This document shows, in pieces, positions 1 to 50,809 of a DNA stretch of 52,955 bases. The stretch comes from Fonticula alba ATCC 38817. Lineage: Eukaryota > Protista > Nucleariida. The position numbers and the translations under genes are program-made. Within the stretch, counting starts at the first letter, position 1; each line of letters starts with the position of its first letter. The stretch lies in assembly GCA_000388065.2 (NCBI GenBank), contig KB932202.1; one strand, given 5' to 3'. The notes below the pieces were generated by a model. It was not told the DNA's origin. It was given only the letters and a program-made list of their open reading frames with translations, and ran no database searches.

Positions 1-65
1 CCCCCTCCCCCTCGATCGCACTCTTGTCTCTGACATGGACTCCCTCCTGCGTGTGTCTTGCCCAG

Positions 66-2506
66 ATGAGCTTGATCGTCGGATTGTGGAGGCTGTCCGG
101 CTGTCCGGTGTCAAGGCCATCGTCGTGGACGGCTGGTCCCGGCGGTCCAAGGAATCGCGCGAGCCGCAGCCCGGGTCGCCGAGCCTCGGCACGCCGATGC
201 CCGTGGCCGGGTCGTGCATCCACCTGGCCACCTGCCCCGGATCCTCGGGGCCAGCGCACCAGGAAATTGCCCCCGGCCCGGGCGGGGCCATCACCGCGGC
301 CTCCGGTCGCATCATCGGCGCCGGGACGTCCACCGTGCAGCTTGCCACCTCGACGGTGTCCTCGGCCGCACGCATCCTCGGCTCGGCCTTCTCCGGGATC
401 TTCTACGCCCCGAACAGCGGCGCCACCACCGGGACCGATTACGACAGCACGCTGCCCTATGGGCTGGGCGGTCTGACCATGGAGGAGCTCCTGGCCACGG
501 AGGACTTCACGCTGCCGGGCGGCAGCGGCAGCGGGCCCGGCATGTCGTCCGAGGTGGCGGAAGAGCTCCTTCACCAAGGGATGGAGCATTTCCTTCGCGA
601 CATGCAATCCAATTACCTGACCGCCGAGCATGAGCTCTCCCTGCCGACCAGCTCCATTCGCCTTGGTGGCGGGTCATCCTCCGAGTCCCTGGCCACATCG
701 CGGTCTGCCTCATCCGCCAGCCTGGCCGACGAGGAGGCGGCTCTCTCGGAGGACACTCCCGGGGCCGGTGGCATTTGCGATTCCAGCATCGAGTTCCCCT
801 CGCTGTCGGAGGATCTGTTGAATGTGACCGGGCGTGATGGCGGCAGCCCCGGAGGCTCGTCGCCTGCCGTGCACCCGGCCCCCGGCGGCCGGACGGCCAG
901 TCCCCTCCCTCGGATGTCCTCATCAGCCTCGCCGAATGTCGATGTCGACGACGCGGACTATGTCATCAGCGATCTGGTGTACAATGAGGCGCGCTTTGCC
1001 TCGGCGCTGGGCAAGGCCGAGGCGGTGGACCCGACCGGGGCCACTGCCGGCCCCGGGATGCCCCCCGCTGCGGGGACTTCGGCCGGGCCCGCCGCCCCTG
1101 GCCATCATCATCACCACCACCACCACCACCACCACCATCACCACTTGGCCGCCGAGCCCCAGTCCGCCGGGGGAGCCGGTCGATCGGGATCCGCCAGCGG
1201 GCCGGCGACTGCCACGGGAGAGGCGCCCGAATGCGCCGAGTCTCCCACCTCCCGAGCCGAGGCGGCCGCCCATGCCAAGGGTCGGGAGCCATGTTGCTCG
1301 AATGGCCTGCCCCCTGGGGTCACCGATAGTGCCAGTCTCGGGACCTTCTTCCCCTCGCACCCCCGGCGGGCCCCGGAGTCGGACTTCATCTATCGCATGG
1401 CCGGGGCCCCGCACGACCGACTGTTCCCCCTGTGTGATGCGGTGGTGCACCATGGCGGTGCCGGTACCTCGGCGGCTGGCATCCGTGCCGGCCTCCCGGC
1501 CGCCATTTGTCCCTTCATGGGGGACCAGTTCTTCTGGATCAACCAGCTGGGCCACCGTGGCCTGGGCGTGGCCTTGCGTCTTTCACGTAAGGATCTTCTG
1601 TACTCGGATTCGAAGCCAGCCCCGACCGTGTGTCCACTGCACCCGGTCCCCGTGCCAGGCGCCCGGCCAACGGGCCTCACCGCCAGCGATCCATTCGCCG
1701 GGCAGAAGCCCACCGCCAGCGAGGATGGCCCCTCCCCGACTTGTCCCCCTGAGCAGGGCCCCCCGGCGAGCCGGCCGCCTGGCCCTGGCGCGAGCCCCTC
1801 GGCCACCGGGCCCAGCCCGGGCGCCACTCCGGAAGTGCCTCCTACCAAGGACACCCCCTCGACGGCGGGCTCCGGCTCCGGGCATTCGGCTTCGTCCTCC
1901 TCGGTCTCCGCCTCGGCGGGGGCTGCCCTGCCGGCTGCCAGCCAAGCCCCGCTGGCGGCGCTCCCTCTGGACGAGGGGGTCTTCCGCATTGCCACGGTCT
2001 TGCGGCTGCTGAGCCTGCCGGACACGCCGATGCGCCGGCGGGCGGCCTGGCTCGGTCGTCGTGTGCGCGCCGAGACCCCCTGCGAGAGTCTCACCACGCT
2101 GCTGAACCTGGAGTTCGAGCACCAGAGTAGCCTGCTGCAGGCGGAGTCCTTCGTTCTGGTGAATCACACGCTGACTCCCGGGCAGCTGGACACTGACCAG
2201 CGCCCGGTCTTCGCCTCGGACCTGGAAATGCCCACCGAGTCGCTATTCTCCTTCGACGTTGCTTCCGAGACTCGGGGGTCCGGTTCGTCGGTCGCCGCAT
2301 CGATGTCGGCAACAGCCCCGTCGGCCCCGACTCCGGGTGCCGAGATCCCGGGGCCGGGGGATGGCATTCCCGAGAAGCAGGCGACCGGGGAAACGGAGGC
2401 CAGCGGTGATGGCGAGCCCTCGGCGACCGGCACGCCACCCCCATCATCATTGGGCGATGACCTTCTCCGTCCGTCGACACCACCGCCGCCCCCCTCGAGC
2501 GAGTGA
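66..2506 (+). CDS. UDP-glycosyltransferase (GT1, sterol 3-beta-glucosyltransferase/UGT51-Atg26-like), last exon only; gene starts upstream of the window
   Basis: Branch-like CTGAC (30-34) and acceptor cccAG (61-65) precede the exon, so the ORF-track Met at 35 is intronic. Motifs: (D)ELDRRIVEAVRLSGVKAIVVDGWS, then PHDRLFPLCDAVVHHGGAGTSAAGIRAGLPAAICPFMGDQFFW (typical UGT51/UGT80 C-terminal signature), and closing helix MRRRAAWLGRRVRAE. Stop TGA at 2504-2506. Confidence 0.85.
1103..1144 (+). repeat. (CAC/CAT)14 coding trinucleotide repeat = 14 consecutive His
   Basis: Read directly, in frame with the glycosyltransferase exon. Confidence 0.95.
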
Positions 2507-3959: not shown

Positions 3960-4409
3960 TTCCCTCAAATCAGGAGAGACGCGAGGCCGAGGGGNNNNNN
4001 NNNNNNNNNNNNNNNNNNGGGTGGGTGTCGGATCCGTTGATATCGAGGTGCGTGAACGAGCCCGTCTTTTGGGTCAGATTTCGCCTCTCGCGGGGAAGGC
4101 AGGCCCGGGAACAGGACCGAGCAACAGGGCCTGGCCGCGGGGCGAGTGGTTACGCCCGCACGCCGGAGGAGGACGCCCTGGCGGATCGGTCCCCCCGCAA
4201 TCGTGGCTTTCCGTTGTCAGTTGCTCCCCCTCGATCTGGCACGATCGCGCCTTCGTCCCAAAGTGGCCTCGCCTGATTGCAGAACACTGGCAGAAAGCAG
4301 GACCTCTGCGGGAGGGGCGGTTTTACAGCGGCCATGATTCGCCGGCTCGGTGGGATCTGAGCCCGACCCAACGCCGGGGCCCTCACCTGGACTTTCACTT
4401 TCTCCCTCC

Positions 4410-7315: not shown

Positions 7316-7553
7316 NNNNNNNNNNNNNNNNNNNNNNNNNNNNNNNNNNNNNNNNNNNNNNNNNNNNNNNNNNNNNNNNNNNNNNNNNNNNNNNNNNNNN
7401 NNNNNNNNNNNNNNNNNNNNNNNNNNNNNNNNNNNNNNNNNNNNNNNNNNNNNNNNNNNNNNNNNNNNNNNNNNNNNNNNNNNNNNNNNNNNNNNNNNNN
7501 NNNNNNNNNNNTGTGTGTGTGTGTGTGTGTCTGTGTGTGTCTGTGTGTGTGTC
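7247..7553. repeat. (GT)n microsatellite spanning assembly gap 7316-7511
   Basis: GT/GTCT repeats on both sides of the N-run. Confidence 0.9.
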
Positions 7554-9242
7554 TGCAAGCACGTACCTGTTCGGTCCCTTGATCCAACCTGGCCCCCCCT
7601 CGCCGGGGAAGCACCAGCGCGAACACGTGTATTCCCTCGAATTTCCGCCTGTCTCCTTCTTCTCGGGCGCTTGGGCGTGTCATTGTGTGTTTCACGCGGC
7701 AGGGGCAAGGTGTCAGCGCAAAGAGAAGAAGGCAGGGAAGAAGAAGGCGAAGGGGAAGAAGGCGAAAGCGAAGAGGCGCCTTGGCATCGAAGAAGCACCC
7801 GGGCTTTCCTCTTCTTCGTGAAGATGCGGCAAGAATACGCAAAACGCACGGCAGACCGATGCACGATCGCGCAAGTCAGCTCGACCATTCCCGGCGCGCC
7901 TCCGGCGCCCAGATCTCTAGCGAGGTGTGCACGCGCGGCAGATATAAAAAAAACACAAATAAAATGGCCCTGTGCATCCTGACCAACAACGGCACGAGGC
8001 CCGGGGGACGAGCAGCGGATCGCGGGCAAATCGCGTCATGTCGATCATGTGCCCTGGTCACGTACGCTCTAGGGTCCTACATACCCCAAGCAGCGTCTCT
8101 CGCCCCGCCCTCCTCTCCGGAGTGGGAGACTGGGGGGGGGGGGGGGAAGGACGACTGCCCCCTCGGTTGTGTTTTCCGTCGGCCGCGCATGCAAGCTCCG
8201 TGCGTCCTGTCCGGTCCGGGCGTGGAGCGCGCCGGTTCGGGGCAAGTGGGACTGGAGGCGGGGGAGGCTCGTGCACCCGGTCCCCGGCAATCACTCTGTC
8301 CATCATCATGCAGGGCCCGGGGTGCACGAGAACCTTGGTCGCGAGGGGGGGGGGGGGGGCGGGGCCAGGCCGGGGCCGAGCCCCAACACACAACGGCAAC
8401 GGGCGGCGGCCGCCTGGCTGTCGGACGCCCAACAGGACAATTGGTTGGCAATCACAACAATTTGCTGAGTGGACTGGTGATCGACGCCAGGTACCGCAAG
8501 GAGAAGGAGTCCCTGATTGANNNNNNNNNNNNNNNNNNNNNNNNNNNNNNNNNNNNNNNNNNNNNNNNNNNNNNNNNNNNNNNNNNNNNNNNNNNNNNNN
8601 NNNNNNNNNNNNNNNNNNNNNNNNNNNNNNNNNNNNNNNNNNNNNNNNNNNNNNNNNNNNNNNNNNNNNNNNNNNNNNNNNNNNNNNNNNNNNNNNNNNN
8701 NNNNNNNNNNNNNNNNNNNNNNNNNNNNNNNNNNNNNNNNNNNNNNNNNNNNNNNNNNNNNNNNNNNNCTTCGGTGCGGCAGGCGCTCGGTATTCCGATC
8801 GTCGATTGCCGCCACCGGGGGGCGGGGGGGGGGGGGGGTGCCGGGGGACGTGCGTGCCAGGGCGCAGGCGCACACGCAGCCCTGTGTGCCCCAGTCCCGG
8901 GGGGAGGGGGGACAAACGGCAGCTGTACACAAACGCCCGGCGCTGCGTGGGTCGCTCTCGTTCTTGGTCTGGGTCTCCCTGGCGGTGCATGCAGATCATG
9001 CAGGGGGGGGGGGGGGCGGCCAGCGATCCAGGCCCTGCGAGGAGACGAGAGCCCCGTCCCCCCCCCCCGCCCTCGGGCTGCCCGGTTGGAAGGCGGCGGT
9101 GTTTCTTTCTTTCATGCGGGGTGCGGGCATGGCCCCGTCGCAGGACATCACCATTACCCGCCTCCGGATGGCGAGCGGAGCCCGCTCTATTTTCGTCTCT
9201 CGTTCGGTCAGGGTATTCGGGATGACTGTTTTTCGCCCCTGG

Positions 9243-9335: not shown

Positions 9336-9451
9336 CCGCCCCTATCCCGGCCTCTCTCGTGGCACTGAAAGGCGCCCCGGCCAGAGGGGCCGATGCCTGC
9401 CAGGCACACAAGGCATTTTGTGCCATCTCTCCCCCTCCTTCTCTGCCTTTA

Positions 9452-9493
<42 letters not shown>

Positions 9494-9792
9494 GCACGCC
9501 CATTCTTCCCCCGTCCGAAGAGCTCCCCGTCCCCGCGTGCCCTTCCATGCACGGCCCCTATCCCGCCCGGCCGTCCGCCCTACACTGTCTCCCCATCTGA
9601 GAATTCCTTTTACCCATGTTTTCCTCGGTCCCCCGGCGCCTTGGCGCGCTGGCCGCCTCCGACGCGTGGTATGCACGTCGCGCGGCCAGCTGCCTGCCGG
9701 GGCGGCGGTTGCTGCCGCCACCATCACCATCGTCACTTCCCGCCAGTGGCGCCGACGTGCCTAGCCACGCACGCGCCCTTTCGTCGCTGAGC

Positions 9793-12184
9793 ATGCGCAC
9801 GGCCGGCCTGCCGCCGCCGCCTGCCGCCCTGCGATCCGACTCCAGCCGCGCTGGTGGCTCCCCGGCCCGCGCGCGGATCTCCCTCTTCGGCACCCCGGCC
9901 CAGCGCGCCGTCGCAATGCTTGCATCTCGGGTGGTGCGTGCCCCGGCCCCCGGAGGGGGGTGGGGGTGGGGGGGGGGGTGGCCCTGCCGTCGTCCTCGTG
10001 CCCGGCAGCTCCCCGTCACATGGACACACGCCCTCCGACCCTCGCTAACCGCTTGCACATGCGCCGACATGCTTCCCTCCCCGCCTTTCCTCCCCCATGG
10101 GCATGTGGCCTTTATCGTGTGCCCCCCCGGGTTTCCCCCCCCCCCCCTGGCCACGGCGGTGCATGCACACATAGCCGGTCTTTTTCTCGAGTCTTGATGC
10201 GCTCTACTTTTCAGAATACGAGAAGGCCCTGGCCGGGACGCTGTTGCCGCGTGCCCGGCCATCGGTTCCCCTTTTCCCGCCGACGGCCCCATCGCCGCCC
10301 ATGTTTTCCCGCCCGGCGACCATGCCGGCGACCGAGCGGCCGGTCCCTCGGGACCAGTCTTCCGCAAGCCTGACCACGGTGGCCTCGGAGCCCGGGACCG
10401 GTGTTGTCCCGGCGACCGGTGCCACCGAGCTTCACACCGCCCAAACCGACCTGGCCGAGTCGCCGGGCATGTTCCACGTCAAGCCGGCCCCCGCCTGCAC
10501 AACGGCCCTGCTGAGCGAGGTCCACGGCAGCGAGTTTGTCTGCCGCGCACTGGGCGAGACGTCGATGATGCCGATCGCCGACTCGCCCTTGCATGACGGC
10601 GGCATGGCCACCACCGGCGCCGGTCCCGGTGCCATTGCCGCCGTCACGGCCGCCGCCCCTGTCGGGCAGCCGGCCGCCGCCTCCGGCGGGCATGGAGAGG
10701 AGGGCGGCCTCCTGGCCGGTGGCGACCTGTCGGACTCCTTTTCGCTGGCCACATGTCGGCCGGGGACGCCTCTGCCTCCGTTGGTGGCCGAGCGCGAGCG
10801 TCATGCCATCGGCGCGGCCATCGAAGCTCTATCATTGCTCCATGGTGCGTCAAGCTCATCCTCCCTCGTGCCTCCCCTCTGTCCTGGCCGTTTTTCCTTG
10901 TCAGCCTCATCTCACCGATTACTTTGTGTGTTCCGTCGGATCTCCCCCCCCCCCCCTTCCTTCTCTTCCTCTTTCTCTCTCCCTCCCTCCCTCCCTCTCG
11001 GTTAGCCGGTTCCCAGTTTGCCGGAAGTCTGTCCGGTAGCTTGGTCTTCAATGAGATCTCCGTTGCCATCAGTGCGTGCCCCCAGGGGCCTTGGTACTTC
11101 CTTGTTTCCCCCCGCCCAGGAGGCGGAGGCGGCCTTGCTCTTGTCGAGTCTAACCACGTGAAATCTCCCCCCCCCCCCTCATCTTCCGCCTTCGCTTGTC
11201 GGGATAGACCATGCCGTTCGGCATCTGGGCTACCGGCGGATCCTAGTATGTGACCTGTCGTGGTACCCCCGGCCCAGCCAGTGGCCCGGGACCGAGGGCG
11301 ATCCTGCCGCCGACCTGACCACGGCCGCGGCGGCGGCCGCCGCCGCGGCCGGCCCCGGTGGCGCGGCCGAGGACGCCAGTGTCTTCACTCTGTCCATCCG
11401 CCCGAGCGGCGAGCTGATTGACGACTCGACCGGCGTTGTGGATCCGTCAGTCCCGCCGACGCCGCCCGCCCCCTCGGCGGCCGGGGCCTTTGAGGCCGGC
11501 GAGCAGCCCGGAAGCAACCAGCTGGTGATCGACATCAGCCCCGATGCCGCGGACCACGAGTACATTCCCCTGGTGTCGCGGTCTCTCCGGCGGGCCTTCG
11601 CCGTTTGGAAGCCGGATCTCATCGTCTACCATGCGGGGATCGAGTCCTTCTTCTCGGAGCCTCCTCCCTGCCAGCGGCTCCCCTCGGGCCGGCTGATTCA
11701 GTACCGGCCATCGCGGGTCACCCGCCAGGGGCTGTCCGAGCGGAACCGGCTCCTATATGAGCTGGCCATTGCAGCCGGAGCGCCGGTTCTCACGCTGGCT
11801 GGCGCGCCGCCCGTCATCCCTGCCTGCCTGGAGGATGAGGCCGATGCTGATGCCAATGCCCCGGTTGGCTTTTCTTGCCCCTCCTCCCCTGCTGCGGCAT
11901 CCTCCTCCCCGGTCGGGGTTGCCGGCGGTGCTTCCGCCCTCGGGGGCACCCCTTCAGAATCCCCTCAGCCCGGTGGTGGCTGCCCGGTGGCACCCTCCCC
12001 CACGGCCATGGTGTCTGGCCGGCCGGGCAGCGGCCCGCCAATGCCCGCCTCCTCGCCGGTGCCCGGCCTTTCGCTGCCGGTCTTCCGGGCCCGGCGGTCG
12101 GCCGCCTCCGCTGCTCGCGCGGATCTCTTCCGCGCCGCGGCCCAGGTGCTGGCCGTGCACAACCACCGCCAGTTCTTCTTCTGA
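9793..12184 (+). CDS. Histone-deacetylase-fold protein (HDAC11/class IV-like) with degenerate active site, probable pseudoenzyme; 4 exons, about 617 aa
   Basis: Exons 9793-9933 (least certain), 10175-10844, 11006-11071, 11208-12184 join in frame (1854 nt). HDAC scaffold motifs appear in the correct order: EYEKALAGTL, RERHAIGAAIEA, VFNEISVAI, RRILVCDL, VFTLSI, DHEYIPLVSRSLRRAFAVWKPDLIVYHAG, RQGLSERNRLLYELAIAAGAPVLTLAG. Confidence 0.75.
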
Positions 12185-12805
12185 GCGTCGCGCGCGCGCA
12201 TGCACACATGATCGCGCAGAAAGCGCGCCTCCCACACCCCCTGTCCTTGTTCCTGTTTCCACTGCCCTCCCCTTTCCCCAGCCGCCCTCGGCGCGTCCCC
12301 CACCATCGGGGTGCGCACATACTGGCGGGGGGGGGGGGGGGGGGCTCCTCCCCGAATTTGGGGGGCGGGGTCTCCCATCGTACATGTGTCTGTGTGCGCC
12401 CACGGGGGGCACCAGTGTCGCATTTCCCTCACCTCCCTCTCCCCCCTCTGCAAAGCGAGAAATACACTCCTCCCCTCCCCCCTCACCCCCCTCCGAGGGT
12501 CCCCCTCCTCCTCCTCCTCTGGCGAGGGTTTCCAGCCACCTCATGAATGTCACCCGAGACGCATACACTAGGGAGGGCTGGGTCGGTCTAATGGTGAGAA
12601 GGGGAGGGGGGCAACGCACGCCAAGCAGCATACGGACCATTGGACTTCAGTAGTCCGGCGATCTGGGAAGGGCTCTTCGCCAACGAATCGCGAAGCAGCT
12701 TCGGCATAGCCCGGAAAGGGGGCCAAGCTGCGTGTGGTTCCCCCCCTTCCAAGCTACTCGGGCATAGGCCTCCTGTGTGTGTGTGTGGGGGGGGGGGGGG
12801 GGCCT

Positions 12806-14760
12806 TCACTCGAATGGGTTGATGAAGAGCATTCGATTGCCGGAGCCCCGCGGGTCGGTCACCAGGTCCGGGACAGACCGGTCGAGAAGGGCCTGCTTCA
12901 TGCGAACCTGGTCCATGGAGGCATCTTGGGCCAGCATGAGGGCCGCCGCACCGCCTGCCGGGCACAAGAGAGAAATCCCGCCAGGGCCCACCGAGCCAGG
13001 GCCGAGGGGGGGGGGGGGGAATGTGACGGTCAGCAAGGGGAGCACCGCCTGTCAAGCGGGACCCCCCTCTCGGCGAGACACCGATCGAGGGCCGCCTTCC
13101 TGGACGCGGAAACCCCCAGCAAAGGTGCACGGAAGAAAAAAAAAGGGGGCACATACTGACATGCGGACAGGCCATCGACGTGCCGGACAGGGCTCGGGTG
13201 TTGGTCCGGGAGTTGCCGATCCAGGCGCTGGTGATGCTGACCCCGGGAGCGAAGATGTCCACGCACTTGCCATGATTGGAGAAGGAGGCCCGGTGGTCGG
13301 CACGATCAACGGCGCCGACCGTGATCACCGAGGGAATGCGCGCCGGGGAGACGAAGCACGAGTCGCGGTTCTCATTGCCGGCCGCCGCCACCAGGATGAT
13401 GCCCTCCTCGATGGCGATCTTCACCGCATTGTCGATGATATTCGACCCCGGGCTCCCGAGGGACAGGGAGATGATCGACCGAGCCCCGGGCACCTTGCGG
13501 TGCTCCTTGGTCACCCAGGTGATGCCGGCCGCCACGTTGGACATGGCCCCGGCCCCGGAGGCCCCGAGGACCTTGACGCCCACCACATTGGCGGCCTTGG
13601 CAATGCCGAAGGTGATGCCGGCTGCGGGGCCAAAGCGGGTGTCAGATACGGGGGCTTCGGCCGGGGGCACGCTCGGCTCTCGGCTCGCGCATCGTGTTGC
13701 CCGGCCCCCTCCCCTCCCCTCTCTTTGCCTTTCTCTCTCTCGCCCCCCCCCTCTCTCTCTCTCTCTCTCGCACGCGCGCGCGTTCAGGTATCGCCCTCGC
13801 GCCGAGACGCCCCAGGAGGGCCCGGCTGCCGGGTGGTCCCCGCCTCCCGGGCCCTCTTCCTGGCAATGCTGACCCGTGATACGTACCGATGGTCCCGGCA
13901 CAGTGTGTGCCATGGCCATTGTCATCATAGGACCCGGGCTTGCCCAGGGATCCGCCGCGGTGGAAATTCCACCCGGCCCGAGCACGGGTCCCAAACTCCC
14001 GGTGGTCATGCTGGATCCCGGTGTCCAGCACGTAGACATCCACCCCGCGGCCACCCTCGGCGTCGAAGTAGTACCGCCGGTCGAGAGGCAGCTGGCGCTG
14101 ATCCACCCGGTCCAAGCCCCAAGTGGGGTTCAGCTGGATGGTGACATCGCGCGTCTTCGCGCCGGGGTCCTCGGCCCGGGGCGGCGGGGGGACGCGCGGC
14201 GCGCTGGCCGGCCCATTCGGAGCGTCACCCCCCCCGCCCGGGCGCTTGGGCCCGAGCAGGGGGGGCAAGATGCGCCGGTCGGGGACCGGAGCCTCGATGG
14301 ACACCACCAAATCGTGCTCGATGTACTCGATGATGTCCGAGCGGTTGCGCACGCGCGCCAGCAGGTGCGGGCTCAAGCGGGCGGCCAACGCCCGAAGCCG
14401 CGAGCCAAAGGTGATCATCCGCCCGTCCGGGGCCCAGCGGGCGGAAAACTCCCCAAACAGCCCATCATCCACATCGCTGCGGAAGACGATGATATACTTG
14501 TCGGGGATGATGACGGCATTGCGCTCGGCCTGCAGCAGTGGCACCAGCTCGCGCAGGCGACTGACCGTGGCCCGGAGCGGTGTGCGCACCGTGTCCGGGG
14601 TCATGGACGCCGGTGGTGGGGGCCAGATCCCCGGGCCGGTGGGCATTTCCGCATGTCGACGGTCGCGGCTCTCGGCCGGTGCGGCCACCTCCAGCGCTCG
14701 AAGCACCCCGGCCAGCAGGAGAAGCAGCACAACCACGTGCGGAAGGGTACGTCGAGCCAT
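12806..14760 (-). CDS. Secreted subtilisin-like serine protease (S8A, proteinase K type) with signal peptide and I9 prodomain; 3 exons, about 495 aa
   Basis: Exons 14760-13887, 13621-13157, 12954-12806 (1488 nt). Signal peptide [22 protein letters not shown]; I9-like KYIIVFR...[10 protein letters not shown]; mature-domain start [13 protein letters not shown]; intact triad VLDTGI / [12 protein letters not shown] / GTSMACPHV. Confidence 0.95.
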
Positions 14761-15485
14761 GGCCTGAAGGGGGGAGGGGGTGGCGGCGGCGGCGGCTGTG
14801 CGGGGATGAGGGATGAGGGGCGGGGGAGGAGGGGGGGGGGGGGGGGGGGTAGAGGGGCAGCAACACAGGTAGGGCGTGAGGACACGGCACAGAGCTGGGA
14901 GGCGAGCACGCAAGGATGTCGAAGCTAAAAGAAGGACGAAGGACAGGATTGCTGGTGTTGCAAAGACGGCCCAGGCCATCTGGTGGCAGGGGGGGGGGGC
15001 CTTTTCTGGCCACTGCTGGTGGCGAACACCCTCGACGCCGCTTTCAAAGTAGCCCAGCAGTGGCAGGCCGCCCGGTCGGCCAGCCACCCGCCCAAAGGAC
15101 ACACCAAGCATAGCGGAGGCTGCCGCGCAAGGTGCCGGGGACACACAAGGCATGCCCCCCCCCCCCCCGCCCGAGCAGCTGGCCTGCAATAGGCCCCGCG
15201 CTGATCCCCCTCCGCCCTGCCATGGCAGCCCCCTGCTGACATATGCATTCGCATCGCAGCCCCCCAGACGAGCGGCATGGTAGACGCCCTGCTCGGGAAT
15301 GCGACGCATTTGCGGGGCACATAAAGGGCAAGACATCGGCAAACAGAACCACGGCATGGAAATGCCCGGGAAAAGAAACAGGGATCTCTCTATTGCTCCC
15401 GGGGGGGGGGGACCGCCGGGGAAGAAGCAAACACTGGCGCAGGTGCAATCGAGGGCTAGGTGTCAAATTTGATGGGCACGTGTCT

Positions 15486-16640: not shown

Positions 16641-18926
16641 GGCAGCGGGGGTGGAGGGGAAAAGGGCAAAGGAAGGGGACGTGCGGCGGAGAATAGACGC
16701 GAAGGCGAGCGGGAGCGATCGAGGCCAGAGGTGATGGCCGGTGCGCGGTGAAGCCGGCCCCGAACGGGGTCTCTTTCAGATCTGGGGGCGCATTATGGGG
16801 AAGTGATGCCTGCCCCGCCCCCCCCCCCCATCCAGGTCCCGGGTCAGGCAGGCCGGCGCCGCTGTGTCAATTGTTTCATGACCGAAGGGCGGGCGGTCCC
16901 GAGCCAGTGGCAGGAGGGGGGCGGGCGGGGGCTGCCCGCCGGGTCGAATAGTCGACCAAGGGAAGAAGGACAATCATCACGGCCTTGTGTAGAAGTGAGC
17001 CGCACACACACACACGCCAACATCCAGTCCAGGGCGCAGCCAATGATCGGGGCGCGAACAAGTTTGAAGGAAGGCGCGCCGCTGGCCACATGCTCCCGGT
17101 AACATGTGACCGCCTTTCAGGTGCTCGGCCTACATTTCCCCAAACTTTTTTGAGTGGCGCGCTGACCGGGCCCCCGCCGCCCCGGGGCCTGGGGGGCGAG
17201 GCAGACGGGGCGAGGCAGACAGGGCGAGGAGGGCTGGCCGCCCGGAAAGAGTCCTGCCCGGCCGTCGGTCGGGACCGGAGCCGGGGGGGGGGGGGGGAGC
17301 CGTTTCATCTGGGTATCCTGGGCGNNNNNNNNNNNNNNNNNNNNNNNNNNNNNNNNNNNNNNNNNNNNNNNNNNNNNNNNNNNNNNNNNNNNNNNNNNNN
17401 NNNNNNNNNNNNNNNNNNNNNNNNNNNNNNNNNNNNNNNNNNNNNNNNNNNNNNNNNNNNNNNNNNNNNNNNNNNNNNNNNNNNNNNNNNNNNNNNNNNN
17501 NNNNNNNNNNNNNNNNNNNNNNNNNNNNNNNNNNNNNNNNNNNNNNNNNNNNNNNNNNNNNNNNNNNNNNNNNNNNNNNNNNNNNNNNNNNNNNNNNNNN
17601 NNNNNNNNNNNNNNNNNNNNNNNNNNNNNNNNNNNNNNNNNNNNNNNNNNNNNNNNNNNNNNNNNNNNNNNNNNCGTCGGTCGGGACCGGAGCCGGGGGG
17701 GGGGGGGGAGCCGTTTCATCTGGGTATCCTGGGCGTGCGGGTTTCCCTCTCATGGGGGGGGGGGCGACAGCGACACCCTGGTGGCTAGGGGGCGTAGGCA
17801 GGTTGGCTCTTGGGGAGAGGGGCGGGGGAGGGGGGGATGCCATTCGTCAAAGGCTGGCGCGTGGATCCCAGGCGACGCGCTTCGAGAACCCGGGAGGAAC
17901 GGCCGCCGCGTCGATCGTGCCGCTGGGGCACAGATGGGGCGCGCCCGATCACCGGCGCCTCCGCGAGCGTGCGCGCGCGGCCCTCTACCCGTGCCTGCCG
18001 AAGGCGCCAGAAGGCAGGCCGATCGAGTGAAACCAAAACGTTGGCGCAGCTGGTGTCCCTCGATAGGGGCGATACGTGGAGCGGGGGGGGGGGGGCAGGG
18101 AAAGACGAGGTGTAGAGCCCGTGCGTGCATATGCGCGGGTGTCGGTGCGTGTGTGTTCGGGGCTCGGGCCCGACATGAGAATGGGACCGCCTGGCCAGCC
18201 CGGCCGGGAGTGGGGGGGGGGGGGCGGCCGGCCGGCGGGGCTCCCGCGGGGGAGGGCCCCGCTGGGCATGCAACGAGGCCTGGTTGGAAAAACAGGCATC
18301 CGCCGCCACTGCCGCCTCGGGGGCCTGGCGGGCGCCCTTCAAACGCGGGCAGAGCCCCCTGGCATTAGACGCGGCCTGCTCGGCTGGCCCGGCTCGTCCT
18401 CCGGGCGACGAGGGCGCCGGCGGCGCGCGCGCGCGCGTGCGCGCGTATCGAGTTGGGGGTAAAATGCCCCGGGGCGCATGGTCCGCCTGCCTGCGGCGGC
18501 TGCCAGCCGGAGGGGTGCGCATCTACATGCTGGTCGGAGTGTCTGTCTGTCTGTGTGTATGTTTATCTAAGTGCCTCCGCGGCTTGGTGGCATGAAAACC
18601 GGGGGCCCCTCGCTTCCCAGCCAGGCTTTGAGGGAGTCCCGAGTTCACCCTGGATGGGGGTGCCCGCGCGGAATAATTGACCCCGGGCCGCTAACTCTCG
18701 GGGGAGAGGGGGCTGGGCACAACCTGCCTCGCCGCCCCCGGGAGGGGAAAACGTCGATCTGTCTCTCCCGAGCCGTATCTCCCGGAGGGAACAGGTTCCC
18801 CCCCGCCAAGGGCTCCTCCGACCGGCGAGTCCGACACGGGCCCGACCCCAGGGACAACCGGCATATAGTGATTGCGCTTTGTCCGGCCAGGGTGGGAGAC
18901 AGCCAAGGAAGACCAACTTGGGCTTT

Positions 18927-18962: not shown

Positions 18963-19659
18963 NNNNNNNNNNNNNNNNNNNNNNNNNNNNNNNNNNNNNN
19001 NNNNNNNNNNNNNNNNNNNNNNNNNNNNNNNNNNNNNNNNNNNNNNNNNNNNNNNNNNNNNNNNNNNNNNNNNNNNNNNNNNNNNNNNNNNNNNNNNNNN
19101 NNNNNNNNNNNNNNNNNNNNNNNNNNNNNNNNNNNNNNNNNNNNNNNNNNNNNNNNNNNNNNNNNNNNNNNNNNNNNNNNNNNNNNNNNNNNNNNNNNNN
19201 NNNNNNNNNNNNNNNNNNNNNNNNNNNNNNNNNNNNNNNNNNNNNNNNNNNNNNNNNNNNNNNNNNNNNNNNNNNNNNNNNNNNNNNNNNNNNNNNNNNN
19301 NNNNNNNNNNNNNNNNNNNNNNNNNNNNNNNNNNNNNNNNNNNNNNNNNNNNNNNNNNNNNNNNNNNNNNNNNNNNNNNNNNNNNNNNNNNNNNNNNNNN
19401 NNNNNNNNNNNNNNNNNNNNNNNNNNNNNNNNNNNNNNNNNNNNNNNNNNNNNNNNNNNNNNNNNNNNNNNNNNNNNNNNNNNNNNNNNNNNNNNNNNNN
19501 NNNNNNNNNNNNNNNNNNNNNNNNNNNNNNNNNNNNNNNNNNNNNNNNNNNNNNNNNNNNNNNNNNNNNNNNNNNNNNNNNNNNNNNNNNNNNNNNNNNN
19601 NNNNNNNNNNNNNNNNNNNNNNNNNNNNNNNNNNNNNNNNNNNNNNNNNNNNNNNNNNG

Positions 19660-19820: not shown

Positions 19821-21789
19821 GGCCTGGGAGCCTTCCGGCGGATGTTAACGGGAAGGCCCATGGTGCGGGAACTTGTCCATGCACATGACACCTGCCCCCT
19901 TCGCCGCCTCGCGGCCCGCAGCCGGTCGGGGCGAAAGGCCCCAGGACCTTGAGGGCAATCCCTCCAAGCGGAGCCCTTCATCCATGCGCCAGCCCGAGGG
20001 GGGGCGGGGGGGGAGAGCGCGTGGAGCTCGCTCGTCGGCGAACAGCGCCAAGCGACTGCCCCCCTCTGGGCACCCCCATGCAGCGGAATGGGGCGAGCCT
20101 TGTAGACCGGAGATCTGGCTGGGGAGCCCCACCCCCCCCCATTTGGGGGGCCGGGTGCGGGGGACCTCGTGCGGTACACCCCCCGCCCCCGACCGGACAT
20201 CGGGATCGGCGGCCGGATGTGGGTGGCTCGGCCGAAATGAACCGCCCAAACGCGCGCGCGTTGCACGTTGTCCGCCTGAGGTGTCCCTACTCGCATCCTG
20301 GCCACTTGTCCGCGCGCCTGCCCCTTGCCCTCCGCAGAACAGGAGCCATTCTCAGACCCAGGGCCGCGGGGCGAGATGCTCGATCGCCGGGGCCGGGGCT
20401 CAGCTGCCGGTGCCCGTTCTCCCGGTCCAGGGCGACCGGGCGCTGAACTTGCAGGTTCAGGCGTGCGCGCGCAAGCGCAAGCGCCAACATGGCGGCCCGA
20501 GTACCCGTGACAAGACAAGACCGTCACCCGGTCGGCGATGCGGACCGGCTGGGAGGAAGGGGGCGGGGGGGGGGGCAATTAAAACCCGCCTGCCGGCCCA
20601 AAGGACGGGTGGCGACCGCCAATCAGATGTGCATCCTCGCCCGGTTCACACGCGCCGGATGTGGGCACACGCGTGTCTCGGCAGCGGGCGCTTTCGCCCG
20701 CACAGAGCGCCCCCTTCGCCGCGCGACCACTGACGACGCTTTGGGCTTGCGAGGGCGGGACGGGCAAGGAAATCCCCCCCAGGCGTGGGTGACTACTAGC
20801 GTCGCGCCGCGCCCCCGCCCCCCCCCCCNNNNNNNNNNNNNNNNNNNNNNNNNNNNNNNNNNNNNNNNNNNNNNNNNNNNNNNNNNNNNNNNNNNNNNNN
20901 NNNNNNNNNNNNNNNNNNNNNNNNNNNNNNNNNNNNNNNNNNNNNNNNNNNNNNNNNNNNNNNNNNNNNNNNNNNNNNNNNNNNNNNNNNNNNNNNNNNN
21001 NNNNNNNNNNNNNNNNNNNNNNNNNNNNNNNNNNNNNNNNNNNNNNNNNNNNNNNNNNNNNNNNNNNNNNNNNNNNNNNNNNNNNNNNNNNNNNNNNNNN
21101 NNNNNNNNNNNNNNNNNNNNNNNNNNNNNNNNNNNNNNNNNNNNNNNNNNNNNNNNNNNNNNNNNNNNNNNNNNNNNNNNNNNNNNNNNNNNNNNNNNNN
21201 NNNNNNNNNNNNNNNNNNNNNNNNNNNNNNNNNNNNNNNNNNNNNNNNNNNNNNNNNNNNNNNNNNNNNNNNNNNNNNNNNNNNNNNNNNNNNNNNNNNN
21301 NNNNNNNNNNNNNNNNNNNNNNNNNNNNNNNNNNNNNNNNNNNNNNNNNNNNNNNNNNNNNNNNNNNNNNNNNNNNNNNNNNNNNNNNNNNNNNNNNNNN
21401 NNNNNNNNNNNNNNNNNNNNNNNNNNNNNNNNNNNNNNNNNNNNNNNNNNNNNNNNNNNNNNNNNNNNNNNNNNNNNNNNNNNNNNNNNNNNNCCTGCGC
21501 CAAGGCCACATGGTGCCATTCCCGCCGCGGAGAGGGCAGGACGGAGAAGGGGCACGCACTTTTGCGCGGGCGCCCTCGTGCCCGCGAATCCCCTCGCCCC
21601 ACAACCGCTCGCCGTCGACCACCTCCCTCCCTCCCCTCTCCCCCCCCCCCTTGTATGCCCATCTCGCACCTCGCCTGCACTGGCCCTCCCCTCGCTGACA
21701 CGACCTTCGCTCCTGCGCCGGCTGCGCTGCCCGCCCCTCTCCCTCCCTTGCCCCCGCCCCCCTCTGCCCCCCCACTCTCACACACAGAT

Positions 21790-33500: not shown

Positions 33501-35639
33501 AGCTGCAACACCAGGCGGATGTAGTGCGGCCGCCGGACAATGCCACCCGGCATGGACACCAGCCGTCGGAAGAAGGCCACCCAGCACTCGCCCGAAGAGG
33601 GGGTAAACTGCACCGCCCGATCGAGGACCTCAAACATGGAACGCGTGTCCGAGAGATTGACCGAGGCGGGGAAGAAACCGCTGGACTCATCGGCCTCCGG
33701 CCAGTCCGGGACCTCCCGGAGGGCGGTGTGCGCGTCGCCAAGGTGCGGAGCCGCCGCCTCGCCGGCCTCGGCCGTCTCGCCACCGCGATTCTCCGTGCCC
33801 GGGCCGGCCGCCAGCAGCGAAGCCGTCGCCATGCCGGATGCCTCATCGATCGGGGCATCCGGCCGATCATCGGCGTCAGGCTCCTCCTCGCCCTCATCGC
33901 CGACAGGCAGGGCGGTGGGTCGAATGGTCTCATCCAGCTCCATGGCCAGCTGGTGCTCATCGAGGGCCAGGCGCCGGAGGAAAATCTGACACTGGCGCCG
34001 GACGATGGGGGTACTGACCCGGCGGAAGGACTCCGCATCCAGGGCCTCGGCCATGCGGGCCAGGAACTCCGGCGATTCGGCCGACGTGTCGGTCAGAGAC
34101 CCGGCCACCGGGACTTGATCCACGCCACCGGCCCCGGCCGGACCGAGGGCCAACAAATCGGAGCTCATGCGCGGGCGCGATCCCTCCGGCAGGAAGTCCC
34201 CATTCAACAGGCGAACCATGTCCAAAACACCGGCATCGCACAGCTCGGCTCGGAGCTCCACACGGATGAGCAGCGAATCGCGGCACGGGCCGAAGGTGAT
34301 CAGGGCATTGATCAGGGACAGGACCGAGGCCGCCAGCAGGGGCAGGCGCTCGGACACGGCGAAGGACAGGATTTGCACCAGCGGGCCGAGCCGGCCACGC
34401 CGGGGCCCGGTCATGACACACATGCGTGCCGACAGGCCGTACAGGGCGTCCAGCACGCGCGGATGCCGGCTGGGCGACATGCACAGGGCTCCCAGGATTT
34501 CCAGGGCCATGGACACCGTCTGGCTGCCACGCAGGGCGGACCGGCCCGCGAGGGCGGGCATCTGATCGGTGCTGCTGCCGCCGGCCGTGGCCACGGCCAG
34601 ATCGCCCGGGTCCCCGGGGCTGGCGGGAAGGCGCCCGCGCGAGGACACGGCCACCGGCGCCGCGGCATGGTAGTACCGGAGTTCATTGGCCAGGATGACC
34701 ACGGCGTCTTCGGAGTCGGCCACCCGCGCAAAGCCAAGGGCATTGTTCATGAGGGACTTCAAGCCGCGCAGGGCCAGCTCATCGTGATTCAGGGCGCGGG
34801 CCTCATCGCGGAGGTAGATCAGCAGCTCGGAGATGCCGCCAAGATCGTCAAACTCCCGGATCCAACTGATCGGCTGTGCTCGCAGCGAGACAACCATCCA
34901 CTGGAGCAGATCCGAGGAGGGCCGCGAGCTGAGGGCATTCACCACGAACTTAATTTCGTGCGAGCGCTCGGATTGCTGTCCAGACGGACGTGCGGGCGTG
35001 CGGGCGTGCGGGCGTGGGGGCGTGGGGGNNNNNNNNNNNNNNNNNNNNNNNNNNNNNNNNNNNNNNNNNNNNNNNNNNNNNNNNNNNNNNNNAAGCCGCG
35101 GCGGCATATAGCTCGGAAATGGCGGGAGCCGGCAGAGGCGTGTGCCGCACTGGGGGGGAAGAAAGAACAGGGGCAGGGCGGGGGGCAGGGCGGGGGCGCA
35201 CCACACGCAAGTCGTGCGACAGCATGGGCCACTTGCTGGAGGCCGGCAAGGCGCGGAGTTGCTCCAGGGTCCGAGCATCCATGCCGCGGTCGACCATCAT
35301 CGCCTCGAAGAGGCGGTCAAGCTCCTCGTCGGTTTCCGGGCGCTGTGGGGGAGCCGCGGCTTCGGCGTCCTTCGACGGGACAAAGCCCGGTGGAGCACCA
35401 CGTCCATCGGGGTTCCGGTGCTTCGGGGGCATGGAGCTGCCGGAGGTGGGATCGGCCGCGCCGCCGGATGCGGCGCTACGCCGATTCCGGCGACGGCCAC
35501 CGAGACCCTTGCCGCGCTTGGCCTGGCTGGAGGATCGGCTCCGGGGGGGGGAAGAGGGGACCGTGCCCCCGGAGGAGGCGCCGGGGGCCCCGGCGTCGGC
35601 CGCCGCGCCGCCGGACCCCTTGCTGATGGTATTTCCCAT
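30531..35639 (-). CDS. Diaphanous-related formin (GBD/FH3-FH1-FH2-DAD); 6 exons, about 1407 aa
   Basis: Exons 35639-35202, 34975-33140, 32980-32374, 32207-32011, 31816-31580, 31439-30531 (4224 nt). GBD (EELDRLFEAMM...LRALPASSKWPML; SLRAQPISWIREFDDLGG), FH3 (LINAL...RVELRAEL), poly-Pro FH1, FH2 (LKAFNWTKI, ILAVGNYLN, GAYGFKIDALLKL, TLLHFLV), DAD LDALINSLRTGDVF followed by basic KSRRR. Confidence 0.93.
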
Positions 35640-42022: not shown

Positions 42023-43056
42023 GCCAGGAGGAGGGCACACACGCGCGGGCGCGGGCGTTTAGCTCAGCGAGGCGACGCTGCTCAGGCGGCGAGCGCGACG
42101 GGAGAGAGTCACGGCGTAGGCCGTACGGCGGGGGGTGGCGGCGGCGGCGGCGGCGAGCGACGTCGTGGTGGTGGTGGCGGCGGCGACGGCGGGGGCGTCC
42201 GGTGTTGACAGGCGGCGACGACGACGGGCAGCCGGGAGGAACCCGGTGGAGCAGAGGTGGCCGGCGCGAGTGAGACTGAGTGGCGGGCGCTGAACGGACG
42301 CCCGAACGCGGAGGGCGAGATTCGGCTGTGACCGGCGGCAGAAGCGACTGCGGGACTGGGTACTCTCGGACTGGAGGGAAGGGCCGGTACTCCGAGGTGA
42401 CAGGTTGCCACGGGGCCAGGAGCGGCGGGCGCTGCGTGCGCGAAGCGAGCGGACGGCCGAGGAAGTCAGCGTGACGGTCCTCTCCGAGCAGGGGGGAGAG
42501 GGGAGGGGGTGAGCGGAGGGCTGCACGGGGGTGCGGCCGCGGGGACGGGGAGGGGGGCTGCTCCGGCGCCGTAAGGAAGCTGGCGCGGGGGAGACCGAGT
42601 CCGAGCTGCTCGGTGGCTCCGGCGAGATTCAGGCAGGTCCTTGGAGGGGGAGCCTGCCGGGGTGTGTGGGAGGGAGGTGGAGGGNNNNNNNNNNNNNNNN
42701 NNNNNNNNNNNNNNNNNNNNNNNNNNNNNNNNNNNNNNNNNNNNNNNNNNNNNNNNNNNNNNNNNNNNNNNNNNNNNNNNNNNNNNNNNNNNNNNNNNNN
42801 NNNNNNNNNNNNNNNNNNNNNNNNNNNNNNNNNNNNNNNNNNNNNNNNNNNNNNNNNNNNNNNNNNNNNNNNNNNNNNNNNNNNNNNNNNNNNNNNNNNN
42901 NNNNNNNNNNNNNNNNNNNNNNNNNGCGGGGGGAAGAAGCTGGGGGTGACTTCTTTCTGATGGATGGGTGTGTATGGAGGGGCGAGGACAGGCCCTCCGG
43001 CACGCAGGTGGGGCCAAGAAAAGTGGGCTCGTCCTTGGGAGAACGCGCGTCTTGCG

Positions 43057-49016: not shown

Positions 49017-50809
49017 NNNNNNNNNNNNNNNNNNNNNNNNNNNNNNNNNNNNNNNNNNNNNNNNNNNNNNNNNNNNNNNNNCCCCCCGCCGCCGCCGCCG
49101 CCGCCTCCCTGCTCGGCACGCATGGCATCTGTCCAGGCGGCGTGCAGGCCACCCGCGATGCCACCGACCATGAGCCGCTCTTCCGCCAGGAGAGCTTCTT
49201 CCACTACCTGTTCGGCGTGCGGGAGGCCGGCTTCATGGGGGCCGTGCATTTGAAGACCGGGCGGTCGCTGCTTTTCGCCCCCCGGCTGCCCGAGGCGTAC
49301 GCCGTCTGGATGGGCACCATCCATCCTCCGTCGCACTTCGCCAGCCGGTACTCCGTTGACGGGGCCCACTATGTTGATGAGCTGGCCGCCGTGTTGAAGG
49401 CCGAGTCCCCGGCTGGCAGCGCCCCGCCCACGGTGTATGTCCTGCACGGGGTCAACACCGACAGCGGCAACACCACCACCCCGGCCACTTTCGAGGGCAT
49501 CGAGGATTTCCCGGTGAACCGGTCCACCGGCGGTGATGGCCTGCACCACCACCTGGTGGAGTGCCGTCTGATCAAGACCCCGGCCGAGGTGGAGCTCATG
49601 CGCTATGTCAACTCGGTCAGCTCGCGCGCCCATGTCGATGTCATGAAGTGGGCCCCGACCGCGGTGACCGCCCCCGGCGGGCTGAAGGAGTACCAGCTGG
49701 AGGCGCGCTTCATGCACTTCTGCTACCACCATGGCGGTGCGCGCTTCATGTCCTACACTTGCATCTGCGGTGTCGGTGACCATGGTGCCGTGCTGCACTA
49801 CGGCCATGCCGGCGCTCCCAACGATGGGGCCTGCACTCCGGGGCAGATGGCTCTGCTGGACATGGGCTGCGAGTATCATGGCTACGCGTCGGACATCACC
49901 TGCAGCTATCCCATGGGCGGGGTCTTCTCGGCCGATCAGCGTCTCATTTACGATGCTGTCCTGGCCTCGGTCAAGGCCGTCGAGGAGGCCATCCGTCCGG
50001 GCGTCATGTGGCCGGACCTGCACATCCTGTGTGGTGCGTTCTCCTCCGGGCCCCTTTTCGTGTTCCCCCTCTGGCGCTCTTCTCCCGGTGTTGCCCCCGG
50101 TTCGCCGCTGTTCTGCTCGGGGCCGCCCTTGGGGCCGTCATTTTGTCTCCGGCCTTTTCCTCCCCCCCCCCCCCCCCCTCCCCCCTCCGCATCCTTCCTT
50201 TCGGCCAATCCACCCCCACTTACCTACCACCCCCTCGGCCCTCCTGCAGAGACGGTCCTCGTTGAGCGCCTCCAGGCTGGCGGCCTCATCAAGTCCGACA
50301 CCCCTGCCCGTGAGCTGGTGGACCTGGGCGTGGCGGCTCTCTTCATGCCGCACGGCATGGGGCACCTGCTGGGCATTGACACCCATGATGTGGGTGGCTA
50401 TCCGGCCCACATGGACAACCCGGAGGATCTGGTCCCGCGTGCCACGCGCCCCGGGCTCCGGTCGCTGCGCTGCGGTCGCCGCCTGCTGGCCAACATGGTG
50501 CTGACCGTTGAGCCGGGGATCTACTTCATCGAGGCCATCCTGCGCCCGGTGGTCGGGACCTCGGCCGCTGACGTGACCGGCTCCGACGCCCACCCCCTGG
50601 CCCAGTACCTGGAGACCGACCGCGTCCGTGCCCTGCTGGACTCCCGCTTCGGTGGCATTCGCATTGAGGACAATGTTGTGGTCACCGAGACCGGGTGCGA
50701 GAACCTGACCGATGTGCCGCGCGAGGTGGACGACATCGAGGCTGTCTGCGCTGGCCGCCAGACCTGGGCCTTCCGCAACCGCCTGCCCGCGCACAATGCT
50801 GCCGACTGA
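48621..50809 (+). CDS. PEPD: Xaa-Pro dipeptidase (prolidase, M24B); 3 exons, about 559 aa
   Basis: Exons 48621-48843, 49137-50033, 50250-50809 (1680 nt); the N-gap lies inside intron 1. Motifs LFRQESFFHYLFG, VLHYGH, LLDMGCEYHGYASDIT, PHGMGHLLGIDTHDVGGY, LTVEPGIYF, GGIRIEDNV, so the metal ligands are intact. Confidence 0.96.

What the first reader, a model, noticed from the sequence alone, without database searches (positions are those of the whole stretch)
9793..12184. Stand-alone HDAC11-like pseudoenzyme with the catalytic machinery dismantled
Seen, compared with HDAC consensus from memory: (i) the His-His dyad loop (GG.HHA...GF) is absent within a single exon, FAGSLSG running directly into SLVFNEI; (ii) the Zn ligands D-x-H read D-L-S-W-Y instead of D-L-D-x-H (11252-11266); (iii) the third Zn-ligand Asp is Glu (YHAGIE, 11627-11644); (iv) the catalytic Tyr of GGY is replaced (LAGAPP, about 11795-11812). 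The frame is intact over about 617 codons with clean introns and preserved structural motifs, which argues for a maintained protein rather than a decaying pseudogene. Established: HDAC pseudo-domains are known mainly as the second domain of HDAC10, and HDAC11 is a fatty-acyl-lysine deacylase. Inference: a scaffold or acyl-lysine reader role.
Basis: partly seen in the sequence, partly recalled or inferred. Interest (0 to 1): 0.7.

Follow-up and report, generated by a model that had tools for sequence, protein, structure and literature searches.

The report
Zinc-free class IV deacetylase look-alike
The amoeba-like microbe Fonticula alba carries a gene for a protein that keeps the shape of an HDAC11-type deacylase but has lost every residue needed for catalysis, and less eroded versions exist in a few uncultured relatives, so a dead enzyme has been kept for some non-catalytic job.

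Summary
Observation confirmed. A four-exon gene on the + strand (9616/9793 to 12184) encodes a 676-residue protein, database record P0001, which matches the exon translation exactly. P0001 passes Pfam's Hist_deacetyl cut-off (30.5 bits). Its predicted core superposes on class IV deacylase structures (Z 28.5, rmsd 2.8 Å, 280 residues).

All four reported lesions are real:
- A 12-residue deletion removes the His-His loop.
- The zinc ligands Asp and His read Ser and Tyr.
- The second zinc Asp is Glu.
- The catalytic Tyr is Pro.

New here:
- Four orthologues lie on metagenome contigs of uncultured GC-rich eukaryotes. They keep the His dyad (one has lost its second His) and one zinc Asp, but also lack the zinc His, the second Asp and the Tyr.
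- All five proteins end in the same octapeptide, HNHRQFFF. Two intron positions are shared, and the N-termini look like mitochondrial presequences.
- Among the relatives dN/dS is 0.17-0.29. The Fonticula branch is too saturated to test.
- The closest active kin are clade A class IV enzymes. F. alba has no active class IV paralogue.

Function is inferred to be a non-catalytic binder or scaffold. Expression was not tested.

The scan earlier noted a different, class I-type pseudo-deacetylase elsewhere in this genome, not at this locus.

The parts
9616..9933 (+). Exon 1: presequence-like N-terminus.
   Evidence: P0001 residues 1-106. Arg-rich with few acidic residues, and a predicted helix at residues 5-25. 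It ends in ..RV before a phase-0 intron at the same position as in the relatives.
9934..10174 (+). Intron 1 (donor GTGCGT, acceptor AG)
10175..10844 (+). Exon 2: N-terminal third of the deacylase fold, with two low-complexity inserts.
   Evidence: Alignment A1/A5. pLDDT is above 90 for the core parts and below 50 for the inserts at residues 129-185 and 246-295.
10845..11005 (+). Intron 2 (GTGCGT..AG), specific to Fonticula
11006..11071 (+). Exon 3: carries the 12-residue deletion of the His-His loop. The junction is near 11031/11032, after residue 338.
11072..11207 (+). Intron 3 (GTGCGT..AG), phase 1, at the same position as intron 2 of the relatives
11208..12184 (+). Exon 4 with the stop codon: C-terminal two thirds of the fold
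   Evidence: Pfam hit at residues 447-547; alignments A2-A5
11252..11266 (+). Degenerate metal site D-L-S-W-Y: the potassium-site Asp367 is kept, the zinc Asp is Ser369 and the zinc His is Tyr371.
11642..11644 (+). Glu497 in place of the second zinc-binding Asp
11810..11812 (+). Pro553 in place of the catalytic Tyr
11822..12073 (+). Ala/Pro/Ser/Gly-rich insert of about 84 residues before the last helix. It is absent from the relatives and predicted to be disordered.
12158..12181 (+). C-terminal octapeptide HNHRQFFF. It is identical in all family members whose 3' end is known and absent from the bacterial enzymes.

Best explanation
The gene encodes a non-catalytic descendant of a class IV (HDAC11-type, most likely clade A) zinc deacylase. 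The alpha/beta deacylase fold is kept. The zinc site, the His-His general acid/base pair and the transition-state Tyr are gone, so it cannot hydrolyse amides by the family's mechanism.

The loss is old. Orthologues in uncultured relatives already lack two of the three zinc ligands and the Tyr, and catalytic positions keep eroding independently in different lineages. Structural motifs and a family-specific C-terminal tail stay fixed.

Inferred, not shown: the protein is imported into mitochondria through its Arg-rich presequence. There it acts as a binding or scaffolding module. It would use either what remains of the pocket (fatty acid or other small ligand) or the invariant aromatic C-terminal tail as a docking peptide.
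For: Fold and family:
- Pfam 30.5 bits.
- The relatives' exons hit the domain collinearly and sum to about 100 bits against a class IV HMM.
- The AlphaFold core has pLDDT above 90. The top structural matches are VcHdaH and Leptospira HDAC11.

Class IV, clade A lean:
- Profile searches of PDB pick 9gkv, 9rje and 9rje as the best or only hits.
- The active bacterial enzyme L021 shares a nine-residue motif with the family, and its close homologue L022 scores 9rje > 9gkv > 9gz5.

Loss of catalysis.

Family and constraint:
- Reciprocal unique genome hit.
- A clade in three block trees, with support 0.997, 0.969 and 0.785.
- Shared intron positions.
- dN/dS 0.17-0.29.
- The tail is kept across synonymous changes and three different stop codons.

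No active class IV paralogue in the genome.
Against: - There is no expression or splicing evidence, because no reads tool was available and the exact-product look-up was blank.
- Fonticula against the relatives gives pN/pS 0.80-0.88 with upper bounds near 1. Relaxed constraint on this copy cannot be excluded.
- Low-complexity inserts make up about 40% of the protein.
- Localisation rests on composition only.
- The structural model was built with class IV sequences in its alignment, so its preference for class IV templates is partly built in.
- The clade A versus B call rests on weak scores. Fonticula exon 4 alone scores clade B 9gz5 slightly higher.
Confidence: 0.72

Rival explanations
1. The Fonticula copy is a recently inactivated or slowly decaying gene with no function. 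The frame is open only by chance in GC-rich DNA.
For: Raw pN/pS against the relatives is 0.80-0.88. This is the most eroded member of the family. It has large low-complexity inserts. Chance ORFs of 250-300 codons are common here.
Against: - 676 codons across four exons stay open, with three canonical GTGCGT..AG introns.
- From base composition I estimate chance survival at about 1e-5.
- The last eight residues are identical to relatives whose housekeeping proteins are only 52-59% identical.
- The core motifs are still good enough for a confident fold.
Confidence: 0.12
2. It is still an enzyme, using a non-canonical metal site or mechanism. For example, Glu497 and nearby residues might bind another metal, or it might perform a different chemistry.
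For: Glu can ligate metals, and the potassium-site Asp367 is kept. Clade A enzymes have unknown substrates (PMC13325672).
Against: The general acid/base His pair is physically deleted. Two further ligands and the Tyr are replaced. The zinc-His column varies freely in the family (T, T, A, V, Y), which argues against a conserved alternative site.
Confidence: 0.06
3. It derives from clade B (cytosolic HDAC11 proper) or from an unsampled class IV lineage, and acts in the cytosol or nucleus, for instance as an acyl-lysine reader.
For: Fonticula exon 4 alone hits clade B 9gz5 at 19.5 bits against 13.8 for clade A 9rje. Fungal class IV proteins in PMC13325672 (Table S1) are clade B. No targeting predictor was run.
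Against: The family profiles favour clade A structures. The shared motif was found in a clade A-type bacterium. The N-termini of four members are Arg-rich and nearly free of acidic residues.
Confidence: 0.1

Closest known systems
Clade A class IV deacylases (Chlamydomonas HDAC11-1/A, PDB 9RJE; Vibrio cholerae HdaH, 9GKV/9GKY)
   Same: Compact fold of about 300 residues, and the best sequence-profile and structural matches. The eukaryotic members carry organellar presequences, and no peptide deacylase activity has been reported for them (PMC13325672).
   Different: Those proteins keep all zinc ligands, the His dyad and the Tyr. This family has lost them and has gained a fixed C-terminal octapeptide. 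The Fonticula member also carries about 270 residues of disordered inserts.
Pseudo-deacetylase domain of HDAC10
   Same: An HDAC fold without catalytic residues, retained for a structural role.
   Different: It is class IIb, fused to an active domain in the same chain, and found in animals. The present protein is class IV and stands alone.
Class IIa HDACs (HDAC4/5/7/9)
   Same: Deacetylase folds that act mainly as scaffolds or readers.
   Different: They keep zinc and the His dyad and have only a Tyr-to-His change, so the pocket still binds acetyl-lysine. Here the whole site is gone.
Rpd3-like pseudo-deacetylase noted earlier by this scan in the same genome (s1-065460)
   Same: Same organism, same superfamily and the same kind of loss.
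   Different: It is class I-derived and lies on another contig, so it is an independent event.

Membership tests
Pfam Hist_deacetyl (PF00850) / arginase-deacetylase fold | Whole-protein HMM score at or above the curated cut-off of 27.9 bits | tested here: met
   P0001 scores 30.5 bits, E 2.9e-7. Exon 4 alone scores only 20.2 bits. Exon 3 of relative L013 scores 30.0 bits on its own.
Pfam Hist_deacetyl (PF00850) / arginase-deacetylase fold | Three-dimensional fold superposable on solved HDACs | tested here: met
   VIA-align Z 28.5, rmsd 2.8 Å, 280 of 314 residues against 9gky; Foldseek E 2.4e-10. This is a predicted model whose alignment contained class IV sequences.
Class IV (HDAC11-type) deacylases | Closer to class IV than to class I or II in sequence and structure | tested here: met
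   The only or best PDB hits of exon and profile queries are class IV entries 9gz5/9rjd, 9rje and 9gkv. Class IV chains lead the structural ranking by 1-2 Z units. The margins are modest.
Class IV (HDAC11-type) deacylases | A Gly-Gly-x-His-His motif in place of the Arg-Pro-Pro-Gly-His-His of classes I and II (Graf et al., PMC11532494) | tested here: inconclusive
   The relatives have Gly-Gly-x-His-His. In Fonticula the motif is deleted, so it cannot be scored.
Catalytically competent zinc deacylase | Asp, His, Asp zinc ligands | tested here: not met
   Ser369, Tyr371 and Glu497.
Catalytically competent zinc deacylase | His-His dyad and transition-state Tyr | tested here: not met
   The dyad is removed by a 12-residue deletion, and the Tyr column is Pro553.
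Clade A of class IV (Novakova et al. 2026, PMC13325672) | Groups with clade A sequences in a phylogeny that samples both clades | not tested
   No clade B sequences were available offline. Indirect evidence only: the family profiles score 9rje above 9gz5.
Clade A of class IV (Novakova et al. 2026, PMC13325672) | N-terminal organellar targeting peptide | tested here: inconclusive
   The composition fits: 4-7 Arg/Lys and 0-2 Asp/Glu in the first 25-59 residues of four members. No dedicated predictor and no experiment.

The most novel reading that the evidence does not exclude
This is a previously undescribed, conserved family of organelle-targeted, zinc-free class IV deacylase-fold proteins. Its function has moved from catalysis to a new invariant C-terminal aromatic tail (HNHRQFFF). 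The tail may dock onto a mitochondrial partner or into the protein's own vestigial pocket, possibly in fatty-acid or polyamine sensing. In the relatives the gene sits beside S-adenosylmethionine decarboxylase and an amine oxidase.
Probability: 0.25. Interest if true: 0.62.

Novelty: new variant of a known kind. Interest (0 to 1): 0.5.

Why it matters
Pseudo-deacetylases are known from class II, as the HDAC10 second domain and the class IIa proteins. I found no paper describing a stand-alone class IV one. The recent survey of class IV across the tree of life holds no Fonticula entry in its text or supplements.

Clade A class IV proteins are themselves enigmatic: they have intact sites, yet no activity on any tested peptide. 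A lineage that discarded the site altogether but kept the fold under selection suggests that part of the clade A function may not need catalysis. It also offers a natural dead control for finding the ligand or partner.

F. alba now has two independent HDAC pseudoenzymes, which may interest people working on pseudoenzyme evolution in early Holomycota.

Tried and rejected
- Exon-by-exon Pfam and NCBIfam scans gave only a sub-threshold hit on exon 4. Exon 2 alone found nothing in PDB.
- The word search with exon 4 was blank. Its length window of 178-567 aa could not even see the 676-aa self protein, so that blank means little.
- tblastn of the exons against the seven HDAC paralogue loci gave nothing useful.
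- My first reading, that Gln-Phe in exon 3 stood for the His pair with no deletion, was rejected by alignments A1 and A5 and by the HMM.
- The relatives' exon 2 and exon 3 do not find the Fonticula gene by simple search. Only the last exon does.
- The exact-product look-up for P0001 was blank.
The comparison was redone from coordinates and stored files.
- My own spliced models of the relatives were never joined. They were analysed exon by exon, and codon counts were pooled without building a joined sequence.
- Full-length analyses of the Fonticula protein used the database's own record, P0001.

Full report
**Locus and gene model.** The window lies on contig 2 of a 31.3-Mb, roughly 65% GC eukaryotic assembly. 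I did not verify the name independently.

Reading 9500-12500 shows four exons on the + strand, separated by three introns that all begin GTGCGT and end AG. A library search with exon 4 returned the database's own full-length product, P0001, of 676 aa. Translating 9616-9933, 10175-10843, 11008-11070 and 11210-12181, plus the two split codons, reproduces P0001 with no mismatch.

There is no assembly gap inside the gene. The nearest N run is 8521-8768.

**Is it an HDAC?** Exon by exon, only exon 4 gave a weak Pfam hit of 20.2 bits. P0001 as a whole passes the curated cut-off at 30.5 bits, E 2.9e-7.

An AlphaFold2 model was built on alignment A5. It has a confident core, with 192 residues at pLDDT 90 or more and pTM 0.66, interrupted by disordered inserts. 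Foldseek ranks Vibrio cholerae HdaH (E 2.4e-10) and Leptospira HDAC11 first. VIA-align gives Z 28.5, rmsd 2.8 Å over 280 residues, with other HDAC classes 1-2 Z units lower.

The alignment contained class IV sequences, so the template preference is not fully independent.

**Relatives.**
- The scan of 1.84 billion representatives found only the self protein and an 85-aa fragment, P0002.
- P0002 lies on metagenome contigs of a GC-rich, intron-bearing eukaryote, loci L013-L016.
- A word search and a metagenome scan added L017, L018/L019 and L020.
- I modelled their exons from the DNA and kept them apart throughout.
- Their exons hit Hist_deacetyl collinearly and sum to about 100 bits against an HMM of 59 bacterial class IV enzymes.

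Evidence that these genes are orthologues of the Fonticula gene:
- The last exon of L013 hits only this gene in the Fonticula genome.
- Block trees unite P0001 with the four relatives, with support 0.997, 0.969 and 0.785, on a long stem. The outgroup sampling was limited.
- Two introns lie at the same position and phase in Fonticula and the relatives.
- All sequences whose 3' end is known finish with HNHRQFFF. That tail is encoded with synonymous differences and followed by TGA, TGA, TAG or TAA.

The organisms are not close to F. alba. Their SAM decarboxylase and ribosomal protein P2 are 52% and 59% identical to the Fonticula copies, and synteny is not shared.

**The catalytic residues.** The active reference is L021, a bacterial enzyme caught by the same scan, together with 80 homologues. 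All 80 homologues show the Gly-Gly-Thr-His-His, Asp-x-Asp-x-His and Gly-Gly-Tyr motifs. The A5 consensus used for the columns below comes from L021 and 40 of them.

| Catalytic column | Four relatives | Fonticula |
|---|---|---|
| His dyad | H-H in three, H-S in L019 | deleted with ten neighbouring residues |
| Potassium-site Asp | Asp | Asp367 |
| First zinc Asp | Asp | Ser369 |
| Zinc His | T, T, A, V | Tyr371 |
| Second zinc Asp | Ser in three (L019 lacks this exon) | Glu497 |
| Catalytic Tyr | Ala in three (L019 lacks this exon) | Pro553 |

The whole family is therefore zinc-site-defective. The catalytic columns drift freely while neighbouring structural columns stay fixed. This indicates loss of catalysis before these lineages split, with Fonticula the most eroded.

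**Which class?** Every significant PDB hit of exon or profile queries is a class IV entry:
- Fonticula exon 4 hits 9gz5/9rjd.
- Exon 2 of L013, and profile A1, hit 9gkv.
- Profile A2 hits 9rje at 28.6 bits in one stretch, against about 16 per domain for HDAC6.
- Profile A4 hits 9rje only.

According to PMC13325672, 9RJE is the mitochondrial clade A enzyme of Chlamydomonas and 9RJD is the clade B enzyme of Leptospira. According to PMC11532494, 9GKV/9GKY is VcHdaH of cluster 5b. L022, a close homologue of L021, scores 9rje 210, 9gkv 197, 9gz5 157 and HDAC6 119 bits. I read this as class IV, probably clade A. The clade call is not tested by a tree with both clades.

**Paralogues.** The genome holds two class I genes, four class II or HDAH-like genes and one odd HDAC locus. 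None has class IV motifs. An active class IV query finds nothing better than 36 bits. With these queries, the pseudoenzyme is the only class IV-derived gene found.

**Selection.**
- Among the relatives, pooled Nei-Gojobori dN/dS is 0.17-0.29. Raw pN/pS is 0.34-0.45, with bootstrap upper bounds below 0.57. Constraint is strongest in the last exon.
- Between Fonticula and the relatives, core columns are about 30% identical and synonymous sites are saturated. The resulting pN/pS of 0.80-0.88 is uninformative and is compatible with relaxed constraint.

The case for retention in Fonticula therefore rests on three things: the open 676-codon frame, the conserved introns and motifs, and the invariant tail.

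**Mechanism.**
- Shown: the fold, the class affinity, the loss of all catalytic groups, family-level purifying selection and the family-specific tail.
- Inferred: mitochondrial import, because the N-termini are Arg-rich and nearly free of acidic residues and clade A proteins are typically organellar. A non-catalytic binding or scaffolding role is also an inference.

Clade A enzymes show no peptide deacylase activity and trap free fatty acids (PMC13325672). I therefore rate a small-ligand or partner-docking role above acyl-lysine reading.

**Limits.**
- No expression data were available.
- No targeting predictor was run.
- No model coordinates were available to inspect the pocket or the tail.
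- The taxonomic identity of the relatives is unknown.

Noticed in passing
L013:8082-11409; L014-L016; L017:2587-8089: In the relatives the pseudo-deacylase gene lies next to S-adenosylmethionine decarboxylase and a flavin amine oxidase, both polyamine-metabolism families, with ribosomal protein P2 upstream. The order differs between L013 and L017. In Fonticula these genes are on other contigs.
   Followed up: partly
L019:1453-1878: One relative has lost the second His of the dyad (His-Ser), an independent erosion of a catalytic residue within the family.
   Followed up: yes
L020:3859-4216: This relative has an extra intron that splits the last exon just before the conserved Gln-Gly-Leu motif.
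   Followed up: partly
L006 (G000:C9:512339-515836): This HDAC-domain locus matches profile positions 31-220 but shows no Asp-x-His or Gly-Gly-Tyr motif in any frame. It may be the class I-type pseudo-deacetylase reported earlier by the scan.
   Followed up: no
window 12588-15357 (-): A multi-exon subtilase (Peptidase_S8) gene lies just downstream on the opposite strand. A glycosyltransferase-like ORF (EryCIII-like C domain) lies at 35-2503 (+).
   Followed up: partly
window 9955-9980, 10138-10150, 10946-10958, 11166-11178, 12326-12345: Long homopolymer G or C runs sit in the introns and flanks of the gene. A CA microsatellite lies near 9440-9465 upstream.
   Followed up: no
window 3995-4018, 7316-7511, 8521-8768, 17325-17674, 18963-19658, 20829-21493, 35029-35092, 42685-42925, 49017-49081: Nine runs of N (assembly gaps or masked stretches) lie in the window. 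None is inside the gene.
   Followed up: yes
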